Positions 11,207-39,487 are shown, numbered from the stretch's first letter. The stretch is DNA of 63,227 nucleotides from Salpingoeca rosetta (GCA_033442325.1 JAWQFM010000021.1:957460-1020686), one strand, 5' to 3'. The notes: generated by a model not told the origin, from the sequence alone. Numbers and translations are program-made.

Positions 11207-12133
11207 TCCTATGTTGCGTGTGGGACGTGTACTGGAGTGCGGTGGTGATTTTCGTTGCTGCTGCCACGCCATGTTTGCCAGTTACTTCCTTTTCTTGTTA
11301 CAACCCCCTTTCTTACTGTCCGCTGCCCCAACGCACCGCCTTGGATGCCTTACCTGCCTTTTTCTTGCGTTTGCATTAATCGAATCCCACCGAAGTTCCA
11401 ACACCTCCTTCGTTGCGCTGCACAACAGCGCTACAGTTTCGCAGTTTCGGGGGAACGCTGTATTGTATGACCAGAGATGGAACAGAGCGTAACGGGCGGG
11501 GAGGAGAAAGGTGAATGAAGGCTGTGGGGGAGGACAAGCGACGACGGAAAGGCGACATTCAGTATGGAAGGGCAAAACAACGGGCGCATGGTCGGGGGAC
11601 GAAAAGCGGGAAGGACGAAAAGTGGAGGGGGAACGGGAAGGACCACTGGACCACCAAACAGAAACAAGTGTGCTTGGGAGGAAACGGTGAACCAAAGGCA
11701 GCTGTAACGTGCCAACACGTGAAAGGACCGACAAAGGCACACGACAGGATGACGAAGAATCTACACGCACTGCAGAGGAAAGTTGATAGCACCGTAAACT
11801 GACAAGGCGGGCACTTGCCGTGTCTCCTCACAAGAACAAAGAAATACAACAAGAGCCGGTGTGCTCGTGCCTGCGCAACGAAAGGAAAGAATGGAAGCTT
11901 GCAAAAATGTTGTACCGTCAACAAACGCAGCAGAATGGCAGAAGACTATCCAGCACCATGGAACAAGGAAGCGACAAAGCAACAAAGCAACAATCTGCCA
12001 TGATACAGCAATGGCAAGCGTGAACTGAGAGTGTGAAGGAGGGGGATGACGAGACGAGACGCCTAGATGTAACACCGAACCAGTGACGCAACACCACCAC
12101 CCTTGTTGGCGCACGGGTGGCGGGCTGTTGCGT

Positions 12134-12934
12134 TCAGGCCTCAAACACGAGGATGCCGCGCACGAGGACACAGGACGGGTCGTTGATCACAATCTCGGCG
12201 GCTGTGCGCTTGCTGGCCCATTCTGTGGGTGCGAGGGGGAATGCGTCAGCCTTGCTGCCGGTGCTGAAATCGACGACGGCAACATGGGCGTCGTGTCCGC
12301 CAACGAGCGGCTTGCCGTTAAAGGTGACAGCGTCCGGCACTGGGTATGGGTTGCCATACTGCACGTCACACACCAGGACCACCCGGAACTGCTTGCCTGC
12401 AGGCAAATTCAGGTGCTGCAGCTCAGGCGGCACATCCTTACACTTCTTCGTGTACTCGAGAGCATAGTCGAGGTCGTGCGTAAAGTAGAAGCCAGCACCG
12501 TACCAGCCATTGTCAGTCTTCTGCAGCTGTGCGAAATCGCCGCCCAGGATGCTCATAGCAACTTTGAATGACGGCACGCCGTGGAACACGCGCTGCAGGC
12601 GAAGATGCACATCGGGCTGCATCATGGCCTGGTCCAGCACCTTGTACGATGAAGCGCCAGCAGGGTGGAGAGTGACTTGAGCAAGGACAGCAGCCTCCTC
12701 GGCGTTGGTGGGCGCACCCGTTGCCGTATCGATCTTGTACTTGGGATGGAACGGGTGGTTGGCGCTGCTCATGTGGCCAAGATAACGGGTCTGGTTGCGG
12801 TGAACTGCGCCGTTGAAGGCAGCGTTCTTCTGGCTGCACTGCACAACAACGACACCAGTTACAGCCTTGCCAAAGGGCTGCAGAGGAGCTGCTGTTGCTT
12901 CATCACTTGAGCGGCCGCCAGCTTCCGTGATCAT
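12134..12934 (-). CDS. PARP-like ADP-ribosyltransferase catalytic exon (H-Y-E triad)
   Basis: LQRVFHG...GWYGAGFYFTHDLDYALEY...VLVCDVQYG...GHDAH...AAEIVI matches the diphtheria-toxin-like ART/PARP fold signature. Confidence 0.8.
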   Translation of the reverse strand: MITEAGGRSSDEATAAPLQPFGKAVTGVVVVQCSQKNAAFNGAVHRNQTRYLGHMSSANHPFHPKYKIDTATGAPTNAEEAAVLAQVTLHPAGASSYKVLDQAMMQPDVHLRLQRVFHGVPSFKVAMSILGGDFAQLQKTDNGWYGAGFYFTHDLDYALEYTKKCKDVPPELQHLNLPAGKQFRVVLVCDVQYGNPYPVPDAVTFNGKPLVGGHDAHVAVVDFSTGSKADAFPLAPTEWASKRTAAEIVINDPSCVLVRGILVFEA

Positions 12935-13063
12935 CTGTCGTGTGGTTGTGGGGTGGGAGACAAGAGAAGAGTGGGTGACCGGTGAGTGTGAAAGGGAGTG
13001 ATGAAGGGATGGGATGAAGGGGCGTGATTAACATGTCGCAGCAACCCATTGCTTCACACGAAT

Positions 13064-13111
<48 letters not shown>

Positions 13112-13673
13112 TCTCACCTGTTTGGCGATGGCGATGCCCTTGTCGTGGGCAGCGCCAACCGCAGCAATGCGCACGGACGCGCGTGTTGGATGAGTCACCA
13201 TGAACGACTGCAGTGGTTCGAGGACGTCCGGCTGCCACTTCCACGCCGCATTGGCAGGACCGTGCAGCTGCTCGTGTTGCTGTTCCATATCAACTGCATG
13301 CTGTTCTTTGGCGGCTGTGTACTGCCCACCCAGCGTGCCTTGCAGCTGAACAAAGGAAGGTCGATTACCGCTCACATCAAAGCACTGGCCAAGCACCTGC
13401 TGCACCGCATCGCTCAGCCTGCGACCATCAACCTCAACGTCGAGTGGAAGGTATCAACTGGAAGTCCCAAGATCGGGGGCCAAAGGGCTGCAGAGGAGCT
13501 GCTGTTGCTTCATCACTTGAGCGGCCGCCAGCTTCCGTGATCATCTGTCGTGTGGTTGTGGGGTGGGAGACAAGAGAAGAGTGGGTGACCGGTGAGTGTG
13601 AAAGGGAGTGATGAAGGGATGGGATGAAGGGGCGTGATTAACATGTCGCAGCAACCCATTGCTTCACACGAAT

Positions 13674-13721
<48 letters not shown>

Positions 13722-16700
13722 TCTCACCTGTTTGGCGATGGCGATGCCCTTGTCGTGGGCAGCGCCAACCGCAGCAATGCGCACGGACGCGCGTGTTGGA
13801 TGAGTCACCATGAACGACTGCAGTGGTTCGAGGACGTCCGGCTGCCACTTCCACGCCGCATTGGCAGGACCGTGCAGCTGCTCGTGTTGCTGTTCCATAT
13901 CAACTGCATGCTGTTCTTTGGCGGCTGTGTACTGCCCACCCAGCGTGCCTTGCAGCTGAACAAAGGAAGGTCGATTACCGCTCACATCAAAGCACTGGCC
14001 AAGCACCTGCTGCACCGCATCGCTCAGCCTGCGACCATCAACCTCAACGTCGAGTGGAAGGTATCTGCCCTTCTCATACGCTCTGGCAATTGTGGAGATG
14101 TTCGCGCCACCCAGAGCAGCGTATTTGCCGTGGTGCCATGGTTTGATGTTGAGGAACAGCTCCCACACGAGAACGGCAAAGGAAAACACGTCCGTGTCCA
14201 TGCGGAGCTCCTGTCCCTCCAACAGCTGTTCCGGCGATGCCCACAGCGGTGTGCCACCACCATGTGTCAGCACGGACTTGTCTGCCGACTTGAAGGTGCT
14301 CAGGCCAAAGTCCGTCACCTTGGCGGAGAGTGATGCGTCCAGCAGCACGTTGGGCGACTTGAGGTCGCGGTGCACGACGTTGTGGGCGTGCAGGAAAGCC
14401 ATGGCACATGCCACCTCGAAAGCAATGCGCAGGCGGGTTGGCCCATCAAGCGGTTGCTTCTTCACGTGCAACAAGTCGTAGAGGGACCCGTTCTCGGCCC
14501 AACTCAGCACAAAGGCCAGCGTCTGGCTTTGCTCATCGTGGGTGAGGCCAAGGAAGTGCACAATGTTGGGATGACGGAGGGAGAGCAGGATGAGCGCCTC
14601 GCGTCGCAGCTGCTTCAAGTGGTCTGGAATGTCCTCAGACCCGGCAACGCATGCAATGATCTCGGGGAGGCGAGGGCGATTCTGCACTGGGGTTTGCTTG
14701 AGAGCAACCGGCTGTCCTGCCAGCTCTGCCTTGAAGAGAGAACCAAAGGCGCCACCAACTTGCTTGCCGTTGATGTCGAAAACTCGCACTTTTCCCACAA
14801 AACGGGACGACGGGATGTTCAGGTTCAACACGCCCTCTGTATGCAGACGCAAGAGGTGGTATGCAGACGATGAGGCGATGAAGGCGAGAACCGCGTGGGT
14901 TGCAGATTTCAAACACAACCAACGTAAGTGAAATGGACGTTGTGTAATTCGACACCACCAACAGAACTGCACTGACCGAGTTGCTCTTCCCAGTTGTCCT
15001 TGAGTTCTACGCGTGTCTTGAAGAAGGCGTTCTCCTGTGCCAACTGTTGTGAATGCGATTCTGGCACACAAGAAGAAGAGATGGGGTTGGAGTGAGGAGG
15101 AAAGCAACTGAGAAAACCAAAAAGAGAGCAGAGAGTAAACACCTGCACCGCGCTGTCAACAGTCACGCACAACATTACCAAAGTTCTTGACGATGTCTTC
15201 AGAGTTGCTGAGAGATTCACTCAGCGCAGTAACTTGCTGCTCAAGTTCGGCGATGCGCGCGTCTGAAGTGGGGTGGATGAGGGAGTTGAAAGATGTTGTG
15301 AGAGGAATGGGGAGCACGGGACAAAGGAGGGGGAGAGGATAGGTGCAGGTGGAAACGTTGGCAATCGCATCCACTCACCTGCATCATTGAGGGAGGATGT
15401 CTTGGACGCGAGTTGCTGCTGGACTGACTGGAGGTTCTGCTGCAGGCTCGAGACTTGCTGGTGCAACTTCGTGTTCTTCTGTTGTAGACTTGCAGTCTGC
15501 TTGCTGAGGCTGCCGTTCTTCTTCTGCAGCGCATTCTTTGCCTGCTTCAGCTTTGCGTTTGCTTGTTGGACCGCGCTGAGTTCTGCATCTGTGTCGTGCC
15601 CAGGTACACCGTGTCGTGTGGCGTGGCGTGGAAACATGAGACAGGCTGACGCACAGAAAGTGTGTATCGAAGCACGGTGGTGGTTGCTCACCTTTCTCTT
15701 GCAGCTTCTTCTTGAGCGCAGCAATCTCCGACTGGTATGAAAATACAATGTTGAAGGTGAATGCGTGAAACGTGTGAGATTGTGGGCACAATGGAAGAGC
15801 AATACAGGTCAAGTGCGGCTGGAGAGCGACAACGCACCGACGGCTTGGACGATGAGCCTGGCGAAGACGGGGGAGCGACTGCGTCGTATTTCGGGTGGGA
15901 AGGTTGCGGCGTGTTTTGCTGGCGGCGCTCGCTCATGCGCTTGTCAAACGCGTGTCTCGCATCTTCGTCCCTGTCGCGACTAATACAACAGCATTGAGGC
16001 AAACGGCAAGAGTGGTGTGGGCTCAGGCAGCAACATCGTCACGCAGTCGCTCGGCTTGGCGGGGGCTTATGTCGAAATACATTGCACGTATCAAACGGGA
16101 TAATCAACGTACAACTTGACGGTGATGTTGCGATGGGGATCGAGCGCATTGGCGATGGTGATGGCGTGGTCGGCAGTCATCCAAACTCGGCTCAAACTGC
16201 AGGACGTAGAACAAAGAACTAGATTGTGAGAAGAAATGGTTGATGTGACATGTCCCCGAATGCAAGCCAATGGCAAAACGACATGCCATGCTTGAAAGCG
16301 CATAGGGCAGAGTGAACGTACTCCAGGGTCTGCAGGCGGTGGTTGGACTTGAGGGCAACAGCAAGGGCGTCGATGTACGCGTCACTGCGAAAGAGTGGAA
16401 GGCGAGCATTGATTGAACATAAGGAAAGTGTGAATCACACGAAACCACCACAAACCAAACGTATTCAGCGCATCATTGTCAATAATACAGTTCACGCTCG
16501 TGTGAGCGCGTGAGTATATGAGTGTGTGAGCGGGTCAGCTACAAGCATCCGTCACTCAACGCAAACTCACAACACTTGTCACCCAACAGAGTCCACAACA
16601 CATGCACCCAAGTACTCAATTGCGCAAACAAACCTCGCTCAACCACAACAACAACACCAACCATCACAAACACACACCACACACTCCCATCACCTTCCTC

Positions 16701-19700
16701 AGCACAACACCATGTACAACGGACACAGCGGACAATCACAACACAAACACCAACAAACATCAACGCATGTGCAGGCTGCGAGTCAACGTACTTGCTGTTC
16801 AGTCACACGTTCCACGCAGCAACAAAGTTGTAGTTGCGCATTCAGCCGCAACGTCATGCCACGTCATCCCAAGAGCAACAAAACACAAAAAGCAACACAA
16901 ACCAAACGTATGCAGCGCATCATCATCATCACATATACAGCGCATCTTCATCATCATCATCCACAATAGTACAGTACACTCTTGTGTGAGCGCGTGAGGC
17001 ATATGAGTGTGTGAGCGGGTCAGCTACAATCATCCGTCACCCAACGCAAACTCACAACACTTGCCACCCAACAGAGTCCACAACACATGCACCCAAGCAC
17101 TCAATTGCGCAAACAAACCACGCTCAACCACAACAACAACACCAACCATCGCAAACACACACACACACTCCCATCACCTTCCTCAGCACATTCACCATGC
17201 ACAACGGACAATCACAACGGACAATCACAACACACACATCAACACAAACATCAACACATGTGCAGGCTGCGAGTCAACGTACTCGCTGTTCAGTCACACG
17301 TTCCACGCAGCAACAAAGTTGTAGTTGCGCATTCAGCCGCAACGTCATGCCATGCCACGTCATGTCGTGTCATGTCATGTCATGTCAAATGGTGGTTCCC
17401 AACAGCAACAAAACACAAAAAGCAACACATCATCATCATCATCGTCATCATCATCATCATCATCCACAATAGTACAGTACACTCTCGTGTGAGCGCGTGA
17501 GTATATGAGTGTGTGAGCGGGTCAGCTACAAGCATCCGTCACTCAACGCAAACTCACAACACTTGTCACCAACAGAGTCCACAACACATGCACCCAAGCA
17601 CTCAATTGCGCAAACAACCCTCGCTCAACCACAACAACAACAACAACACCAACCATCACAAACACACACCACACACTCCCATCACCTTCCTCAGCACAAC
17701 ACCATGCACAACGGACAATCACAACGGACAATCACAACACACACATCAACACAAACATCAACACATGTGCAGGCTGCGAGTCAACGTACTCGCTGTTCAG
17801 TCACACGTTCCACGCAGCAACAAAGTTGTAGTTGCGCATTCAGCCGCAACGTCATGCCATGTCATGTCATGTCATGTCATGTCAAATGGTGGTTCCCAAC
17901 AGCAACAAAACACAAAAAAGCAACACAAACCAAACGTATGCAGCGCACCATCATCATCATCATCATCCACAATAGTACAGTACACTCTCGTGTGAGCGCG
18001 TGAGTATATGAGTGTGTGAGCGGGTCAGATACAAGCCTCCGTCACCCAACGCAAACTCACAACACTTGTCACCAACAGAGTCCACAACACATGCACCCAA
18101 GTACTCAATTGCGCAAACAAACCTCGCTCAACCACAACAACAACAACAACACAAACCAACACAAACACATACCACACACTCCCATCACCTTCCTCAGCAC
18201 AACACCATGCACAACGGACAATCACAACGGACAATCACAACACACACATCTACACACACACATCTACGCATGTGCAGGCTGCGAGTCAACGTACAGGCTT
18301 TTCAGTCACACGTTCCACGCAGCAACAAAGTTGTAGTTGCGCATTCAGCCGCAACGTCATGCCATGTCATGTCATGTCATGTCATGTCAAATGGTGGTTC
18401 CCAACAGCAACAAAACACAAAAAGCAACACAAACCAAACGTATGCAGCGCATCATCATCATCATCATCATCCACAATAGTACAGTACACTCTCGTGTGAG
18501 CGCGTGAGTATATGAGTGTGTGAGCGGGTCAGCTACAAGCCTCCGTCACCCAACGCNNNNNNNNNNNNNNNNNNNNNNNNNNNNNNNNNNNNNNNNNNNN
18601 NNNNNNNNNNNNNNNNNNNNNNNNNNNNNNNNNNNNNNNNNNNNNNNNNNNNNNNNNNNNNNNNNNNNNNNNNNNNNNNNNNNNNNNNNNNNNNNNNNNN
18701 NNNNNNNNNNNNNNNNNNNNNNNNNNNNNNNNNNNNNNNNNAACATCCAACACACACACATCAACGCATGTGCAGGCTGCGAGTCAACGTACAGGCTTTT
18801 CAGTCACACGTTCCACGCAGCAACAAAGTTGTAGTTGCGCATTCAGCCGCAACGTCATGCCATGCCACGTCATGTCGTGTCATGTCATGTCATGTCAAAT
18901 GGTGGTTCCCAACAGCAACAAAACACAAAAAGCAACACAAACCAAACGTATGCAGCGCATCATCATCATCATCATCCACAATAGTACAGTACACTCTCGT
19001 GTGAGCGCGTGAGTATATGAGTGTGTGAGCGGGTCAGCTACAAGCATCCGTCACCCAACGCAAACTCACAACACTTGTCACCCAACAGAGACCACAACAC
19101 ATGCACCCAAGCACTCAATTGCGCAAACAAACCACGCTCAACCACAACAACAACACCAACCAACACAAACACATACCACACACTCCCATCACCTTCCTCA
19201 GCACAACACACAATCACAACGGACAATCACAACACAAACACCAACACACACACATCAACGCATGTGCAGGCTGCGAGTCAACGTAAGCGCTGTTCAGCCC
19301 CACGTTCCCCGCAACAAAGTTGTAGTTGCGCATTCAGCCGCAACGTCATGCCATGCCATGTCATGTCGTGTCATGTCATGTCATGTCAAATGGTGGTTCC
19401 CAAGAGCAACAAAACACAAAAAGCAACACAAACCAAACGTATGCAGCGCACCATCATCATCATCATCCACAATAGTACAGTACACTCTCGTGTGAGCGCG
19501 TGAGGCATATGAGTGTGTGAGCGGGTCAGCTACAAGCCTCCGTCACCCAACGCAAACTCACAACACTTGTCACCCAACAGAGTCCACAACACATGCACCC
19601 AAGCACTCAATTGCGCAAACAAACCACGCTCAACCACAACAACAACAACAACACAAACCATCACAAACACATACCACACACTCTCATCACCTTCCTCAGC

Positions 19701-21485
19701 ACAACACCATGCACAACAATCACAACGGACAATCACAACACAAACACCAACACACACACATCAACGCATGTGCAGGCTGTGAGTCAACGTACTCGCTGTA
19801 CAGTCACACGATGCACGCAGCAACAAAGTTGTAGTTGCGCATTCAGACGCAAAGTCATACCAAGAACAAGTCACGTCGTGTCATGTCATATCATGTCAAA
19901 TGGTGGTTCCCAAGAGCAACAAAACACAAAAAGCAACACAAACCAAACGTATGCAGCGCACCATCATCATCATCATCATCCACAATAGTACAGTACACTC
20001 TCGTGTGAGCGCGTGAGTATATGAGTGTGTGAGCGGGTCAGCTACAAGCCTCCGTCACCCAACGCAAACTCACAACACTTGTCACCAACAGAGTCCACAA
20101 CACATGCACCCAAGCACTCAATTGCGCAAACAAACCTCGCTCAACCACAACAACAACAACAACACCAACCATCACAAACACACACCACACACTCCCATCA
20201 CCTTCCTCAGCACGATACCATGCACAACGGACACAACAGACAAGCACAACACAGACATCAACACAAACATCAACGCATGTGCAGGCTGCGAGTCAACGTA
20301 CAGGCTTTTCAGTCACACGTTCCACGCAGCAACAAAGTTGTAGTTGCGCATTCAGCCGCAACGTCATGCCATGCCATGTCATGCCACGTCATGTCAAATG
20401 GTGGTTCCCAACAGCAACAAAACACAAAAAGCAACACAAACCAAACGTATGCAGCGCATCATCATCATCATCATCCACAATAGTACAGTACACTCTCGTG
20501 TGAGCGCGTGAGGCATATGAGTATGTGAGCGGGTCAGCTACAAGCATCCGTCACCCAACGCAAACTCACAACACTTGTCACCAACAGAGTCCTCAACACA
20601 TGCACCCAAGCACTCAATTGCGCAAACAAACCACGCTCAACCACAACAACAACACCAAACATCACAAACACACACCACACACTCCCATCACCTTCCTCAG
20701 CACGATACCATGCACAACGGACACAACAGACAAGCACAATACAAACATCAACATGCAGGCTGCGAGTCAACGTACGGGCTGTTCAGTCACACGTTCCACG
20801 CAGCAACAAAGTTGTAGTTGCGCATTCAGCCGCAACGTCATGTTGTGTCATGTCGCGTTCCACACCCAACGCGCGCGCACGAGTCGTTCGGGTTTCATAT
20901 GTGTCCACGGCACCGTGTTCCATGATCGCGCACATGCAACGTGTGGCACACAGTCGTCAATGAAATGTTCAAGAGGAGGCGGTGAGCGCGAGACTTGATT
21001 CTTCTTGTGAACCTCATAACCTCATTTGCGCAAGTCGTCAATTCAGTTGAGCGGACACAGCAACACTGTCTCATGAGCGTCGCATTACATTACTGTTCAC
21101 CATCACCACAACGTTAACGCGTCTTCACACTTCGTTGCTACAGCACATGCATGCTCACTCAAGTTCAACAGCTATGACTTACGCTCTGTGATCCGAGCAG
21201 ATGGTTGAAACAGCGTGTGCGATCGAATGAACATGGAACAAGTCGTGAGCAAGCGACAAAACACGAATGCAACTACCACCCGTGACAGCATGTGTGCTCC
21301 CCCTTCCAATTGCTACCCCAGCAACGTTTGCAAGCGACCAAGCAGCTATCCCTTCAAATCTTCTGCAGGACTCACTTGAAGGTTGGTCCACATGTGTTGT
21401 TGGCGATGGATCGCAGCTCATTCTTGTACCCCTGGTGAAGCCAGTCCATCGCCGCCAGCTTGGTTTCCAGCTCCTGGGAGGTCAT
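12134..21485 (-). CDS. LRR (RI-like, with N-cap) - coiled coil - TKL-type protein kinase - PARP/ART catalytic domain fusion protein
   Basis: Exon 1 21485-21376 MTSQELETKLAAMDWLHQGYKNELRSIANNTCGPTF+aa|gtgagt. LRR exons 16384-16322 (63 nt, DAYIDALAVALKSNHRLQTLD) and 16196-16113 (84 nt, LSRVWMTADHAITIANALDPHRNITVKF). Coiled-coil exons ~15980-14970. Kinase exon ~14835-13728 (VALK, HRDLKSPN, DFG, GTPLWASPE). PARP exon 12934-12134 (VFHG, YGAGFYFT, AEIVI). Splice phases checked by hand for the LRR exons and the kinase-PARP junction are consistent. Confidence 0.8.
12869..14065. repeat. Direct tandem duplication: 587-bp copies 12869-13455 and 13479-14065 separated by a 23-bp unique filler
   Basis: Copies appear identical by eye at offset 610, including (CA)n length. 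Filler AACTGGAAGTCCCAAGATCGGGG. Confidence 0.92.
13728..14835 (-). CDS. TKL (MLK/Raf-like) Ser/Thr kinase exon
   Basis: GGAFGSLF, VALK, RREA, LRHPNIVHFLG, HRDLKSPNVLL, KVTDFGLS, GTPLWASPE, DVFSFAVLVWE. Confidence 0.92.
16792..16794 (-). CDS. Candidate 3-nt microexon CAA (specifies Asn)
   Basis: gactgaacag|CAA|gtacgttgac. Confidence 0.6.
17283..17285 (-). CDS. Candidate 3-nt microexon CGA (specifies Asp)
   Basis: gactgaacag|CGA|gtacgttgac. Confidence 0.6.
17790..17792 (-). CDS. Candidate 3-nt microexon CGA (specifies Asp)
   Basis: gactgaacag|CGA|gtacgttgac. Confidence 0.6.
18295..18297 (-). CDS. Candidate 3-nt microexon CCT (specifies Leu)
   Basis: gactgaaaag|CCT|gtacgttgac. Confidence 0.6.
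18793..18795 (-). CDS. Candidate 3-nt microexon CCT (specifies Leu)
   Basis: gactgaaaag|CCT|gtacgttgac. Confidence 0.6.
19287..19289 (-). pseudogene. Inactivated microexon copy CGC (donor GT>TT)
   Basis: ggctgaacag|CGC|ttacgttgac. The upstream flank also diverges from the other units. Confidence 0.5.
19793..19795 (-). CDS. Candidate 3-nt microexon CGA (specifies Asp)
   Basis: gactgtacag|CGA|gtacgttgac. Confidence 0.55.
20302..20304 (-). CDS. Candidate 3-nt microexon CCT (specifies Leu)
   Basis: gactgaaaag|CCT|gtacgttgac. Confidence 0.6.
20776..20778 (-). CDS. Candidate 3-nt microexon CCC (specifies Pro)
   Basis: gactgaacag|CCC|gtacgttgac. Confidence 0.6.
21183..21185 (-). CDS. Candidate 3-nt microexon AGC (unique, outside the array)
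   Basis: Minus strand: gatcacag|AGC|gtaagt, a canonical acceptor and perfect donor. Confidence 0.6.
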
Positions 21486-21704
21486 GACTTGTTGTTGTCG
21501 ATGAATGCTCCTTCAGGTGTCTTGAGTGTGTGCTTGCACCACTTTTTGTGCAAGAGTGTGGCTGTGTGCTGTTGCCTGCAGGCAAAGGCAGAAGGCAAGC
21601 CTGCGAGAGTGTGATGCTTCTGTCCTGTTGTTCTTGTTGTCCTGTTCAGCCACAGCTGTTTTCACTCACAAACAAAAGAAAGTTGCAAGAAGGCAAAGGC
21701 AGCT

Positions 21705-21780
<76 letters not shown>

Positions 21781-22145
21781 AAGCCTCGTTGAGTCGTTGG
21801 TTGAGTCGTTTCACTGTTTCAGTGCGTTCGGACAGTGGCTGGGGTGTTGTGGTTCTGGTGGTGTTAGGGTGACTGTGTGCTTTGTTTTGTTTTGTTTGGC
21901 TGGAGGAAGTTTGTGGTGTGTTTTCCTGCGAATTTTCACCAAGCAAAGCCAACATCAATTCTGACTTTCCACCCCTCGGCAATTTTGCCCTTCTCCCCAG
22001 CAAACCAAACTCACATCATCACCCTTTCCCCTCGCTTGCTTGCCATGCCGTGCTGTGACTCGACTGAGTTTTACTTCCATTCCATTACAGACAACCAACG
22101 ATCTACCTCCCTCTCTACCACCTCCCTCTCCCTCCCTCTCTGTCC

Positions 22146-39487
<17,342 letters not shown>

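What the first reader, a model, noticed from the sequence alone, without database searches (positions are those of the whole stretch)
16450..21190. One codon per repeat: tandem array of variable 3-nt microexons building the ligand-facing segment of an LRR
Seen: each ~500-bp unit has, on the minus strand, ...gactgaa(c/a)AG|NNN|GTACGTtgac. Flanks are conserved but the triplet differs: in transcript order CCC, CCT, CGA, CGC (dead donor), CCT, CCT, CGA, CGA, CAA. A tenth unrelated site cacAG|AGC|GTAAGT lies upstream at 21183-21185. They sit in a phase-2 gap between exon 1 (..TF aa|) and a 63-nt LRR exon (|t GAC GCG..). Every array triplet starts with C, which supplies the wobble base of the previous codon, so each unit chooses one amino acid with its last two bases. 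No subset can frameshift or create a stop. The next LRR exon is exactly 84 nt (28 aa, RI-like LRR length), and 63+7x3=84. One 7-microexon path gives F-K-A-P-L-D-L-L-N-DAYIDALAVAL, aligning gap-free with L-D-L-S-R-V-W-M-T-ADHAITIANAL and the LxLxxNxIx consensus. Nine intact sites are visible, so spares (Asp/Asp/Asn) exist for the last position. Inference: combinatorial inclusion and/or unequal crossover between units could vary single residues on the LRR recognition surface, a Dscam/VLR-like diversification at single-codon resolution. Gene predictors would miss it because skipping all microexons is also in frame.
Basis: partly seen in the sequence, partly recalled or inferred. Interest (0 to 1): 0.97.

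Follow-up and report, generated by a model that had tools for sequence, protein, structure and literature searches.

The report
Tandem array of single-codon exons
Inside a Salpingoeca rosetta LRR-kinase gene, a 500-bp block holding a complete intron plus a 3-base exon has been copied about ten times. Its two codon-defining bases change about 17 times faster than the surrounding intron, so these look like real single-codon exons, but their presence in mRNA is still unproven.

Summary
On the minus strand, nine ~500-bp units each carry ...ACAG|NNN|GTACGT, with exactly the triplets reported. A tenth site, AG|AGC|GTAAGT, lies at 21183-21185. All sit between a phase-2 first exon and a 63-nt exon.

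The host gene is S. rosetta XP_004991747. It encodes two RI-like LRRs, a coiled coil, a TKL kinase and a PARP-like tail.

New evidence:
- An inverted paralog 57 kb away has ten more units with a different triplet series.
- Two distant paralogs on another contig lack the array. They still keep AG|NNN|GTAAGT sites at the same distances from exon 1 (about 189 and 600 nt), inside introns that otherwise cannot be aligned.
- Triplet positions 2 and 3 are the two most variable of 350 unit columns. They differ in 47% of nearest-neighbour unit pairs, against 2.8% for the flanks.

Best reading (about 0.55): an [intron + 3-nt exon] cassette was amplified by unequal crossover. This inserts about 10-12 variable residues in the loop after the first LRR strand.

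Inclusion in mRNA was not shown. The single read-laying run printed neither a direct exon1-exon2 joint nor any microexon joint.

The parts
21376..21485 (-). Exon 1 coding part (MTSQELETKLAAMDWLHQGYKNELRSIANNTCGPTF plus 2 nt), followed by a phase-2 donor AA|GTGAGT
   Evidence: Sequence read. The X5 RNA contig (depth about 250) ends exactly at 21376, and stranded reads cover it. Homologous first exons occur in 3 paralogs and in an LRR family. It is absent from the annotated models.
21183..21185 (-). m1: cacAG|AGC|GTAAGTcat, 188 nt after the exon-1 donor
   Evidence: Identical in paralog B at 184 nt. Present as AG|ACC|GTAAGTcat at 189 nt in the C23 paralog, whose intron is otherwise about 50% identical.
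16471..20852 (-). Tandem array of nine ~500-bp units. Each unit is the 3' part of an intron (CAACTACAAC..tttgttgctgcg..ACAG), a 3-nt exon, and the 5' part of the next intron (GTACGT..)
   Evidence: Full copies occur only here and in the inverted paralog at C21:1036101-1040948.
20776..20778 (-). Triplet 1, CCC
   Evidence: An exact 77-nt contig of independent run X1 covers it.
20302..20304 (-). Triplet 2, CCT (acceptor AAAG)
19793..19795 (-). Triplet 3, CGA
19287..19289 (-). Triplet 4, CGC. The donor is mutated to TTACGT and the acceptor region has decayed (3-nt deletion plus substitutions, pyrimidine fraction 0.39)
18793..18795 (-). Triplet 5, CCT
18557..18741 (.). Assembly gap (185 N) inside the intronic part of unit 5
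   Evidence: Depth is 0. The same gap is in GCA_000188695.1.
18295..18297 (-). Triplet 6, CCT
17790..17792 (-). Triplet 7, CGA
   Evidence: An exact 78-nt contig of run X1 covers it.
17283..17285 (-). Triplet 8, CGA
16792..16794 (-). Triplet 9, CAA
16839..16841 (-). ATG used as start codon by the public gene model (MRNYNFVAAWNV..). It lies inside the last array unit and is probably an annotation artefact
16322..16384 (-). Exon 2 (63 nt, phase 2): (N)DAYIDALAVALKSNHRLQTL
   Evidence: The contig match is exactly 63 nt on this side of the joint.
16113..16196 (-). Exon 3 (84 nt): second RI-like LRR
   Evidence: Joint 16196->16322 with CT..AC ends seen in X21, X22 and X5.

Best explanation
The gene is a Salpingoeca rosetta LRR / coiled-coil / TKL-kinase gene. 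Its family ancestrally carried one or two 3-nt exons between exon 1 and the first LRR helix exon.

In the two C21 copies, a ~500-bp segment spanning the second 3-nt exon was amplified by unequal crossover to about 9-10 copies. The segment is the 3' part of one intron, the triplet, and the 5' part of the next intron. Every hybrid unit is again a complete intron, with donor GTACGT, a CAACTACAAC/T-rich stretch and acceptor ACAG, followed by a single-codon exon.

If the units are spliced intron by intron, the mRNA gains AGC plus the array triplets. In copy A this gives F-KAPLD(A)LLDDN-DAYID instead of F-N-DAYID. In copy B it gives KAPLAPAFDPLR. The C23 paralogs would gain KPRI and A. The extra residues lengthen and vary the loop that follows the first LRR strand.

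The last two bases of each triplet are codon positions 1 and 2. They diversify much faster than the intron, which points to diversifying selection on a recognition loop.

Shown: the anatomy, paralog conservation, hypervariability, array turnover and the exon edges.
Inferred: that the triplets are in the mRNA and translated, and that selection rather than a mutational hotspot drives the variability.
For: (1) Sites are conserved where the introns are not. AG|NNN|GTA[AC]GT lies 188 and 595 nt (A), 184 and 591 nt (B), and 189 and 600 nt (C23 paralog L016) after the exon-1 donor. L017 has one site at 405 nt, about the length of the second sub-intron (404-408 nt). The A and L016 sub-introns are only about 50% identical outside short islands. 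CAGNNNGTAAGT is rare genome-wide, at 161 sites.

(2) Spacing is always 3 nt. Every GTAAGT or GTACGT inside the four introns (24 of 24) has an AG exactly 3 nt upstream. No combination of triplets shifts the frame or makes a stop.

(3) The triplets are hypervariable. Positions 2 and 3 rank first and second of 350 columns, need 7-8 Fitch steps against a mean of 0.33, and are the only four-state columns. In nearest-neighbour unit pairs they differ 14 times out of 30, against 2.8% for the flanks. This is replicated independently in L016: its two units are about 98% identical downstream of the site but carry GCG and GAT.

(4) The array shape fits duplication of an exon with half-introns. The first sub-intron has a unique 5' part and the last has a unique 3' part.

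(5) Intron sizes favour subdivision. The gene's other introns are 103-183 nt. The sub-introns are 190-506 nt, against 4991 nt for one undivided intron.

(6) The unit with the dead donor also has a decayed acceptor region (7 changes in 79 core positions against 15 in 401 elsewhere).

(7) The annotation misses exon 1. Three annotated paralog models (A, B and the C23 paralog L016) all start at ad hoc ATGs in the last sub-intron, although RNA-seq/PASA was used and the direct join is in frame. That is expected if transcripts carry segments that cannot be aligned.

(8) RNA contigs stop exactly at the exon-1 donor and the exon-2 acceptor, yet no direct 21376->16384 joint was printed. This is weak evidence.

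(9) The N-terminal region evolves fast: A versus B gives dN/dS about 0.8 for exon 1 plus the LRRs and 0.08 for the kinase.
Against: - No read or contig was shown to contain a triplet between exons. Exon depth in the raw RNA runs was only about 1-8, and the output hid 5 joints and 117 loose ends.
- The array acceptors have a poor pyrimidine tract (0.46-0.54, against a mean of about 0.69 for the gene's real introns).
- Each unit also carries an invariant acaAG|TGTT|GTGAGT. This shows that splice-like AG..GT pairs can sit unused in this repeat.
- No database protein contains exon 1 or a triplet-encoded insert.
- Arrays of 3-nt exons are otherwise unknown, and exon skipping is rare in unicellular holozoans.
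- A mutational hotspot at the two bases before GTACGT cannot be formally excluded.
Confidence: 0.55

Rival explanations
1. This is a plain intronic minisatellite. The 5-kb intron is removed in one step (exon 1 joined directly to exon 2, giving TF-N-DAY). The AG|NNN|GTACGT motif is carried along in each unit by descent and is never used. The variable dinucleotide is a local mutational hotspot.
For: - There is no RNA evidence for inclusion.
- The acceptors have weak pyrimidine tracts.
- A second, invariant splice-like pair, AG|TGTT|GTGAGT, sits in every unit and is evidently tolerated.
- The direct join is in frame.
- The splice core is no more conserved than other parts of the unit.
Against: - It does not explain why distant paralogs without the array keep AG-3nt-GTAAGT at the same distances, in introns that otherwise cannot be aligned.
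- It does not explain why the spacing is always 3 nt.
- It does not explain why the same two positions are hypervariable in two independent duplications.
- No direct exon1-exon2 joint was printed, although contigs end at both exon edges.
- The annotation pipelines never found the simple in-frame join.
Confidence: 0.27
2. The ancestral sites (m1 and one m2) are genuine 3-nt exons. The amplified copies are used only partly or variably, through cassette skipping, cryptic choices or unproductive isoforms. The array would then mainly create isoform heterogeneity or regulate expression, rather than encode a fixed peptide.
For: - The paralog conservation concerns m1 and m2 only.
- The array acceptors are weaker than m1's.
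- One unit is already dead.
- The X5 RNA contigs break between exon 1 and exon 2 despite a depth of about 250-300, which would fit a branch in the assembly graph.
Against: - The break between contigs can have other causes, such as the paralog.
- Exon skipping is rare in unicellular holozoans.
- No isoform was seen directly.
Confidence: 0.15
3. Each unit is a mobile or RNA-producing element, either an introner-like transposon or an intron-hosted snoRNA array, and the triplets are target-site or junction remnants.
For: - The units begin with GT and end with AG.
- They contain GATGATGA and CTGA motifs, and there are weak C/D-box snoRNA hits (E 0.24-0.99).
Against: - Full copies exist only at the two paralogous loci. 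Elsewhere only microsatellite-like pieces match.
- No Rfam match comes near the gathering score.
- The unit folds no better than shuffled sequence (z = +1.44).
- RNA depth on the unit is low.
- The ends of the array show duplication of half-introns, not insertion.
Confidence: 0.03

Closest known systems
Schistosoma micro-exon genes (MEGs)
   Same: They have runs of very short symmetric exons (3-81 bp, multiples of 3) separated by long introns. They encode fast-evolving, variable proteins, and the exons are routinely missed by annotation (abstracts of 10.1101/2023.06.21.545858 and PMC4350168).
   Different: In MEGs most of the coding sequence is made of different microexons, in secreted proteins. 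Here only one loop of an intracellular-type LRR kinase is affected. All exons are exactly 3 nt, and they are tandem copies that share a homologous 500-bp intron. Alternative splicing has not been shown here.
Single 3-nt microexons of animals and plants (for example the cytohesin-1 GGG exon; plant microexons of 15 nt or less)
   Same: An AG-3nt-GT exon adds one residue in frame, is conserved, and is often misannotated (titles and abstracts seen: PMC6314551, PMC8831610, PMC8042270).
   Different: Those are single sites. Here about 10 sit in tandem, with codons that are hypervariable rather than conserved.
Recursive splice sites (ratchet points) of long Drosophila and vertebrate introns
   Same: A juxtaposed 3' and 5' splice site subdivides a long intron (my own knowledge, not checked here).
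   Different: Ratchet points are AG|GTRAGT with zero exon length, and they regenerate a donor at the junction. Here 3 nt intervene and none begins with GT, so the triplet would remain in the mRNA.
Dscam1 exon clusters and lamprey VLR cassettes
   Same: Tandem arrays of related coding cassettes diversify a recognition surface.
   Different: Dscam uses full-size, mutually exclusive exons with docking and selector RNA elements. VLR uses somatic DNA assembly. Neither mechanism is evident here, and the diversity shown here is evolutionary (between units and paralogs), not per transcript.
Intronic minisatellite / VNTR
   Same: Head-to-tail ~500-bp units with embedded microsatellites, turnover of unit number, and inter-locus homogenisation.
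   Different: An ordinary VNTR has no splice-site pair conserved in array-less paralogs, and no codon-sized hypervariable core.

Membership tests
Spliceosomal 3-nt microexon | Flanked by a 3' splice site (..AG) and a consensus 5' splice site (GTRMGT) | tested here: met
   ACAG/AAAG|NNN|GTACGT in 8 of 9 window units. One donor is dead. m1 has ACAG|AGC|GTAAGT.
Spliceosomal 3-nt microexon | Length keeps the reading frame, with no stop created | tested here: met
   All 24 sites in the 4 paralogs are exactly 3 nt. The translations are KAPLD(A)LLDDN, KAPLAPAFDPLR, KPRI and A.
Spliceosomal 3-nt microexon | Conserved as a splice element in homologous genes | tested here: met
   Same distances from exon 1 in A, B and L016 (188/184/189 nt and 595/591/600 nt), although the introns are only about 50% identical.
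Spliceosomal 3-nt microexon | Present in mature mRNA | tested here: inconclusive
   One search listed neither a microexon-bearing joint nor a direct exon1-exon2 joint. Exon depth was about 1-8 in the raw RNA runs and part of the output was hidden. No transcript-derived protein was found.
Micro-exon gene (MEG-like) | Most of the coding sequence is built from symmetric microexons | tested here: not met
   Only about 10 of about 900 codons would be. The other exons are 40-1109 nt.
Micro-exon gene (MEG-like) | Protein variation by alternative inclusion of microexons | not testable with these tools
Recursive splice site (ratchet point) | AG directly abutting GTRAGT, so that a donor is regenerated after the first step | tested here: not met
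   There are always 3 nt between AG and GT, and no triplet starts with GT.
Introner / mobile intron | Many dispersed near-identical copies in unrelated genes | tested here: not met
   Whole-unit matches occur only at C21:973930-978301 and 1036101-1040948.
Intron-hosted snoRNA array | A conserved structured small RNA in each intron | tested here: not met
   Rfam gave only sub-threshold C/D-box hits (22 bits against a gathering score of 50). The fold z-score is +1.44.
Dscam-type mutually exclusive exon cluster | Exactly one variant exon per transcript, chosen through docking/selector pairing | not tested
   No isoform data are available. The units are whole introns plus 3 nt, not alternative full exons.
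RI-like (NLRC3-type) leucine-rich repeat | 28-29-aa repeat LxxLxLxxNxIGDxGAxxLAxALxxN | tested here: inconclusive
   Exons 2 and 3 and the tail of exon 1 fit by eye. Exon 1 is homologous to the first exon of a large S. rosetta LRR family with 84-nt phase-2 exons. Pfam reported no LRR family for P0121, only the kinase (E 2.7e-38) and a weak PARP match.

The most novel reading that the evidence does not exclude
The single-codon exons are included in variable subsets. One gene would then produce a population of LRR-kinase isoforms whose recognition loop differs residue by residue. Unequal crossover and diversifying selection would keep renewing the codon repertoire. This would be a Dscam/MEG-like diversity generator at single-codon resolution in a unicellular relative of animals.
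Probability: 0.1. Interest if true: 0.95.

Novelty: new variant of a known kind. Interest (0 to 1): 0.68.

Why it matters
If the triplets are spliced in, this is a gene architecture not described before. A codon-sized exon would be amplified together with its intron, so that unequal crossover adds or removes single residues and selection rewrites them. The affected loop is the likely recognition loop of an LRR kinase, in the closest unicellular relatives of animals.

It would show that intron-defined splicing can chain about ten 3-nt exons. It would explain why all members of this family are misannotated at the 5' end. It would also give a simple, testable example of how receptor loops can diversify without whole-exon duplication.

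Practically, it flags a class of exons that gene predictors and RNA-seq aligners cannot see.

Tried and rejected
- RNA reads. It confirmed the exon edges and the exon 2-3 joint. It printed no joint or loose end at 21376 or 16384. All joints listed inside the array have non-canonical ends and sit at AAC/CA microsatellites, so they are artefacts.
- Transcript-derived protein fragments. I searched with the exon-1 peptide (no candidates), with P0121:13-120 (nothing) and with the exon-1 peptide against the representative library (one spurious repeat-protein hit). Searches were coordinate and length slips.
- Independent assembly. The NCBI record GL832973.1 is the same assembly, with the same 185-N gap, so it is not independent. 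Independent support for two triplets comes only from exact X1 contigs.
- Introner or transposon origin: rejected.
- snoRNA or structured RNA: rejected.
- The recurrent genome-wide CAGCAAGTAAGT sites are unrelated Gln-rich exon ends, not microexons.
- Stronger conservation of the splice core than of the rest of the unit was not found.
- Literature. Nothing was found on 3-nt exons or exon arrays in choanoflagellates.
- Not attempted.

Full report
**Observation.** On the minus strand of window 16450-20900 there are nine head-to-tail units of 491-509 nt. Each contains ...gtgactga(a/c)AG|NNN|GTACGTtgactcgcag. Exon 1 (ATG at 21485) ends at 21376 with two bases of a codon. The next exon (16384-16322, 63 nt) starts with the third base, and exon 3 is 84 nt.

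The assembly gap (18557-18741) lies inside the intronic part of unit 5. Both of its sides align in register with the other units, and the unit with its N's is one period long (498 nt). The gap therefore touches neither a triplet nor the frame. No read spans it, so whole extra units could be hidden there.

**What the gene is.** The window is Salpingoeca rosetta, the Broad assembly GL832973.1, with the same gap. The gene is XP_004991747 ('TKL protein kinase', 883 aa, P0121). It encodes two RI-like LRRs, a coiled coil, a TKL kinase (Pfam E 2.7e-38) and a weakly PARP-like tail.

The public model starts at an ATG inside the last array unit (window 16841, MRNYNFVAAWNV..) and ignores exon 1. The models of paralog B (MGVC..) and of a C23 paralog (MRVIS..) do the same. 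Exon 1 is nevertheless real:
- An RNA contig at depth about 250 ends exactly at its donor, and stranded reads cover it.
- Homologous first exons exist in three paralogs.
- A similar first exon (..IRAIANNTCG..) begins many NLRC3-like LRR genes of this genome.

**A second array.** The whole 5' region is duplicated in inverted orientation about 57 kb away (C21:1035462-1041050). Overall identity to the window copy is about 92%. That copy has ten units, with triplets CCC CCT CGC CCC CGC CTT CGA CCC CCT TCG. Full units occur nowhere else in the 55-Mb genome. That rules out a dispersed element.

**Paralogs without the array.** This is the key comparison. Two further family members on contig C23 have first introns of only 1160 nt (L016) and 637 nt (L017) and no 500-bp repeat.
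- L016 has AG|ACC|GTAAGT at 189 nt, AG|GCG|GTAAGT at 600 nt and AG|GAT|GTAAGT at 902 nt after the exon-1 donor. The last two lie in a ~300-bp tandem duplicate.
- In copies A and B the first two sites lie at 188/595 nt and 184/591 nt.
- L017 has a single AG|CGC|GTAAGT at 405 nt, which is about the length of the second sub-intron elsewhere (404-408 nt).
- The A and L016 sub-introns are about 50% identical, which is essentially noise. The exceptions are short islands, one of which is cAG|NNN|GTAAGTCAT.
- CAGNNNGTAAGT occurs only 161 times in the genome.
- Every GTAAGT or GTACGT inside the four introns (24 of 24) has an AG exactly 3 nt upstream.

So a splice-site pair enclosing exactly one codon's worth of sequence is maintained in this family while the intron around it decays. 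This is the strongest argument that the sites are functional exons.

**Hypervariability.** I aligned all 19 units. Triplet positions 2 and 3 are the two most variable of 350 ungapped columns. They are also the only four-state columns, and they need 7 and 8 Fitch steps against a mean of 0.33. In the 15 nearest-neighbour unit pairs the flanks differ at 2.8% of sites, but these two positions differ in 14 of 30 comparisons. The pairs are not independent, so the nominal p of 1e-14 overstates the case.

The effect repeats in L016's independent duplication. The ~170 nt downstream of the site are about 98% identical between its two units, yet the triplets are GCG and GAT.

Exact contigs of an independent run cover two of the window triplets, so this is not an assembly artefact. 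In the phase-2 context these two bases are codon positions 1 and 2, so every change is non-synonymous. I found no mutational mechanism that would target them. Diversifying selection is the simplest reading, but it is an inference.

**How the array arose.** The first sub-intron has a unique 5' part, and its last ~70 nt match the unit. The last sub-intron starts like a unit and ends in unique sequence. That is the footprint of unequal crossover on a segment made of the 3' half of one intron, the triplet, and the 5' half of the next. Each hybrid is again a full intron.

The number of m2-type copies is 1 (L017), 2 (L016), 9 (A) and 10 (B). Between A and B, dS is 0.06 for exon 1 plus the LRRs but 0.21 for the kinase. 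The 5' regions are therefore still exchanging sequence. dN/dS there is about 0.8, against 0.08 in the kinase.

**Splicing plausibility.**
- The gene's eight other introns are 103-183 nt long, with donors such as GTACGT or GTGAGT and acceptors ending in ACAG, CCAG or GCAG.
- The sub-introns would be 190, 404, about 470-506 and 407 nt long, against 4991 nt if the intron is undivided.
- The array acceptors end in ACAG or AAAG, but their pyrimidine fraction is about 0.5, at the low end of the real range (0.46-0.79).
- The unit with the dead donor also has a decayed acceptor region.

One caution applies. Every unit also holds an invariant acaAG|TGTT|GTGAGT. A splice-like pair can therefore exist in this repeat without being used, because a 4-nt exon would break the frame.

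**RNA evidence.** The single read-laying run confirmed the exon-1 donor, the exon-2 acceptor and the exon 2-3 joint. It listed no joint between 21376 and 16384 and no canonical joint in the array. Five joints and 117 loose ends were not printed, and exon depth in the raw RNA runs was only about 1-8.

Two X5 contigs carry about 36 and about 45 further letters beyond the exon-1 and exon-2 edges, and these letters were not shown. A direct joint backed by contigs at depth about 250-300 should have outranked several rows that were printed. I take this as weak evidence against a simple direct join, and no more than that.

The Broad pipeline used ab initio predictors plus PASA and RNA-seq. It still missed the in-frame exon 1 in all three annotated paralogs. 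That fits transcripts whose 5' parts could not be aligned.

**Where the residues would sit.** The tail of exon 1, ELRSIANNTCGPTF, lines up with the LxxNxIGD part of the canonical repeats of the sister LRR family. DAYIDALAVALKSN lines up with GAVALAEMLKHN (alignment by eye). The strand is therefore already in exon 1.

The triplets would lengthen the strand-to-helix loop:
- Copy A: KAPLD(A)LLDDN.
- Copy B: KAPLAPAFDPLR.
- L016: KPRI.
- L017: A.

The idea of a ligand-facing variable segment survives in modified form.

**Rivals.**
- A never-spliced minisatellite with a hotspot (0.27). It fails to explain the paralog conservation, the fixed 3-nt spacing and the replicated hypervariability.
- Partial or variable use of the amplified copies (0.15). 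This remains open.
- A mobile-element or snoRNA origin (0.03). This is essentially excluded.

**Comparison with known systems.** The closest known systems are the Schistosoma micro-exon genes, which have symmetric exons of 3-81 bp and evolve fast, and isolated 3-nt microexons of animals and plants.

This case differs in being a tandem amplification of one single-codon exon together with its intron. It sits in one loop of an LRR kinase, and the codons are hypervariable. It is not a recursive splice site, because 3 nt remain and no donor is regenerated. Nothing shows Dscam-like choice.

First-stage notes on other windows of this genome claim 1-nt and 7-nt exons in conserved genes. These notes are unchecked. 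If they are true, they raise the prior that this spliceosome handles tiny exons.

**Verdict.** The microexon reading is the best supported explanation (about 0.55), but inclusion in mRNA is unproven. Combinatorial splicing is speculative (about 0.1). I class the finding as a new variant of a known kind.

Noticed in passing
window ~11444-23520 versus G000:C21:1033525-1045941 (L013-L015): Inverted segmental duplication of the whole kinase gene (about 92% identity), arranged head-to-head about 57 kb apart. The two C23 paralogs (788 kb minus strand, 861 kb plus strand) are arranged the same way. dS is 0.06 in the 5' part and 0.21 in the kinase, which implies recent gene conversion limited to the exon 1-array-LRR region.
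   Followed up: partly
window 12869-13455 and 13479-14065: A 587-bp perfectly identical direct repeat (period 610) lies inside the 3' part of the kinase gene. It is either a very recent duplication or an assembly artefact.
   Followed up: no
window 16571-16574, 17558-17561, 18061-18064, 19070-19073, 19562-19565, 20074-20077, 20570-20573 (minus strand): Each array unit also contains an invariant acaAG|TGTT|GTGAGT. This is a second splice-like pair that would enclose 4 nt and shift the frame. It lies in the most conserved part of the unit (pi about 0.01-0.02).
   Followed up: partly
window ~21280-21295 (minus strand); L016 ~2570: A 14-nt island, AGGGGAGCACACAT, is conserved between sub-intron 1 of copy A and of the C23 paralog, although the rest of the intron cannot be aligned. 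It may be a regulatory or splicing element.
   Followed up: no
L018-L023 (C28:976 kb, C34:12 kb, C26:15 kb, C30:75 kb, C35:35 kb, C32:770 kb): A large family of NLRC3-like LRR genes shares a near-identical first exon (MSGGEKRAREEVEALLAQTKLKDGVK..IRAIANNTCG..) and then 84-nt phase-2 LRR exons. The kinase family's exon 1 is a diverged member of this leader exon.
   Followed up: partly
window 16839-16841; P0001, P0003, P0121: The public S. rosetta models of three family members (A, B and the C23 paralog L016) begin at ad hoc ATGs inside the last sub-intron and lack the true first exon. The 5' ends of this family are misannotated.
   Followed up: yes
window 22254-22256 (minus strand): Another AG|GAA|GTAAGT lies about 770 nt upstream of the exon-1 ATG in a GA-rich repeat. 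It could be a 5'-UTR splice element or chance.
   Followed up: no
L017 (C23:860800-864300), intron 1: This paralog lacks the first 3-nt site. Its distance from exon 1 to its only site (405-407 nt) equals the second sub-intron of the other paralogs. The first sub-intron plus m1 may have been lost precisely.
   Followed up: no
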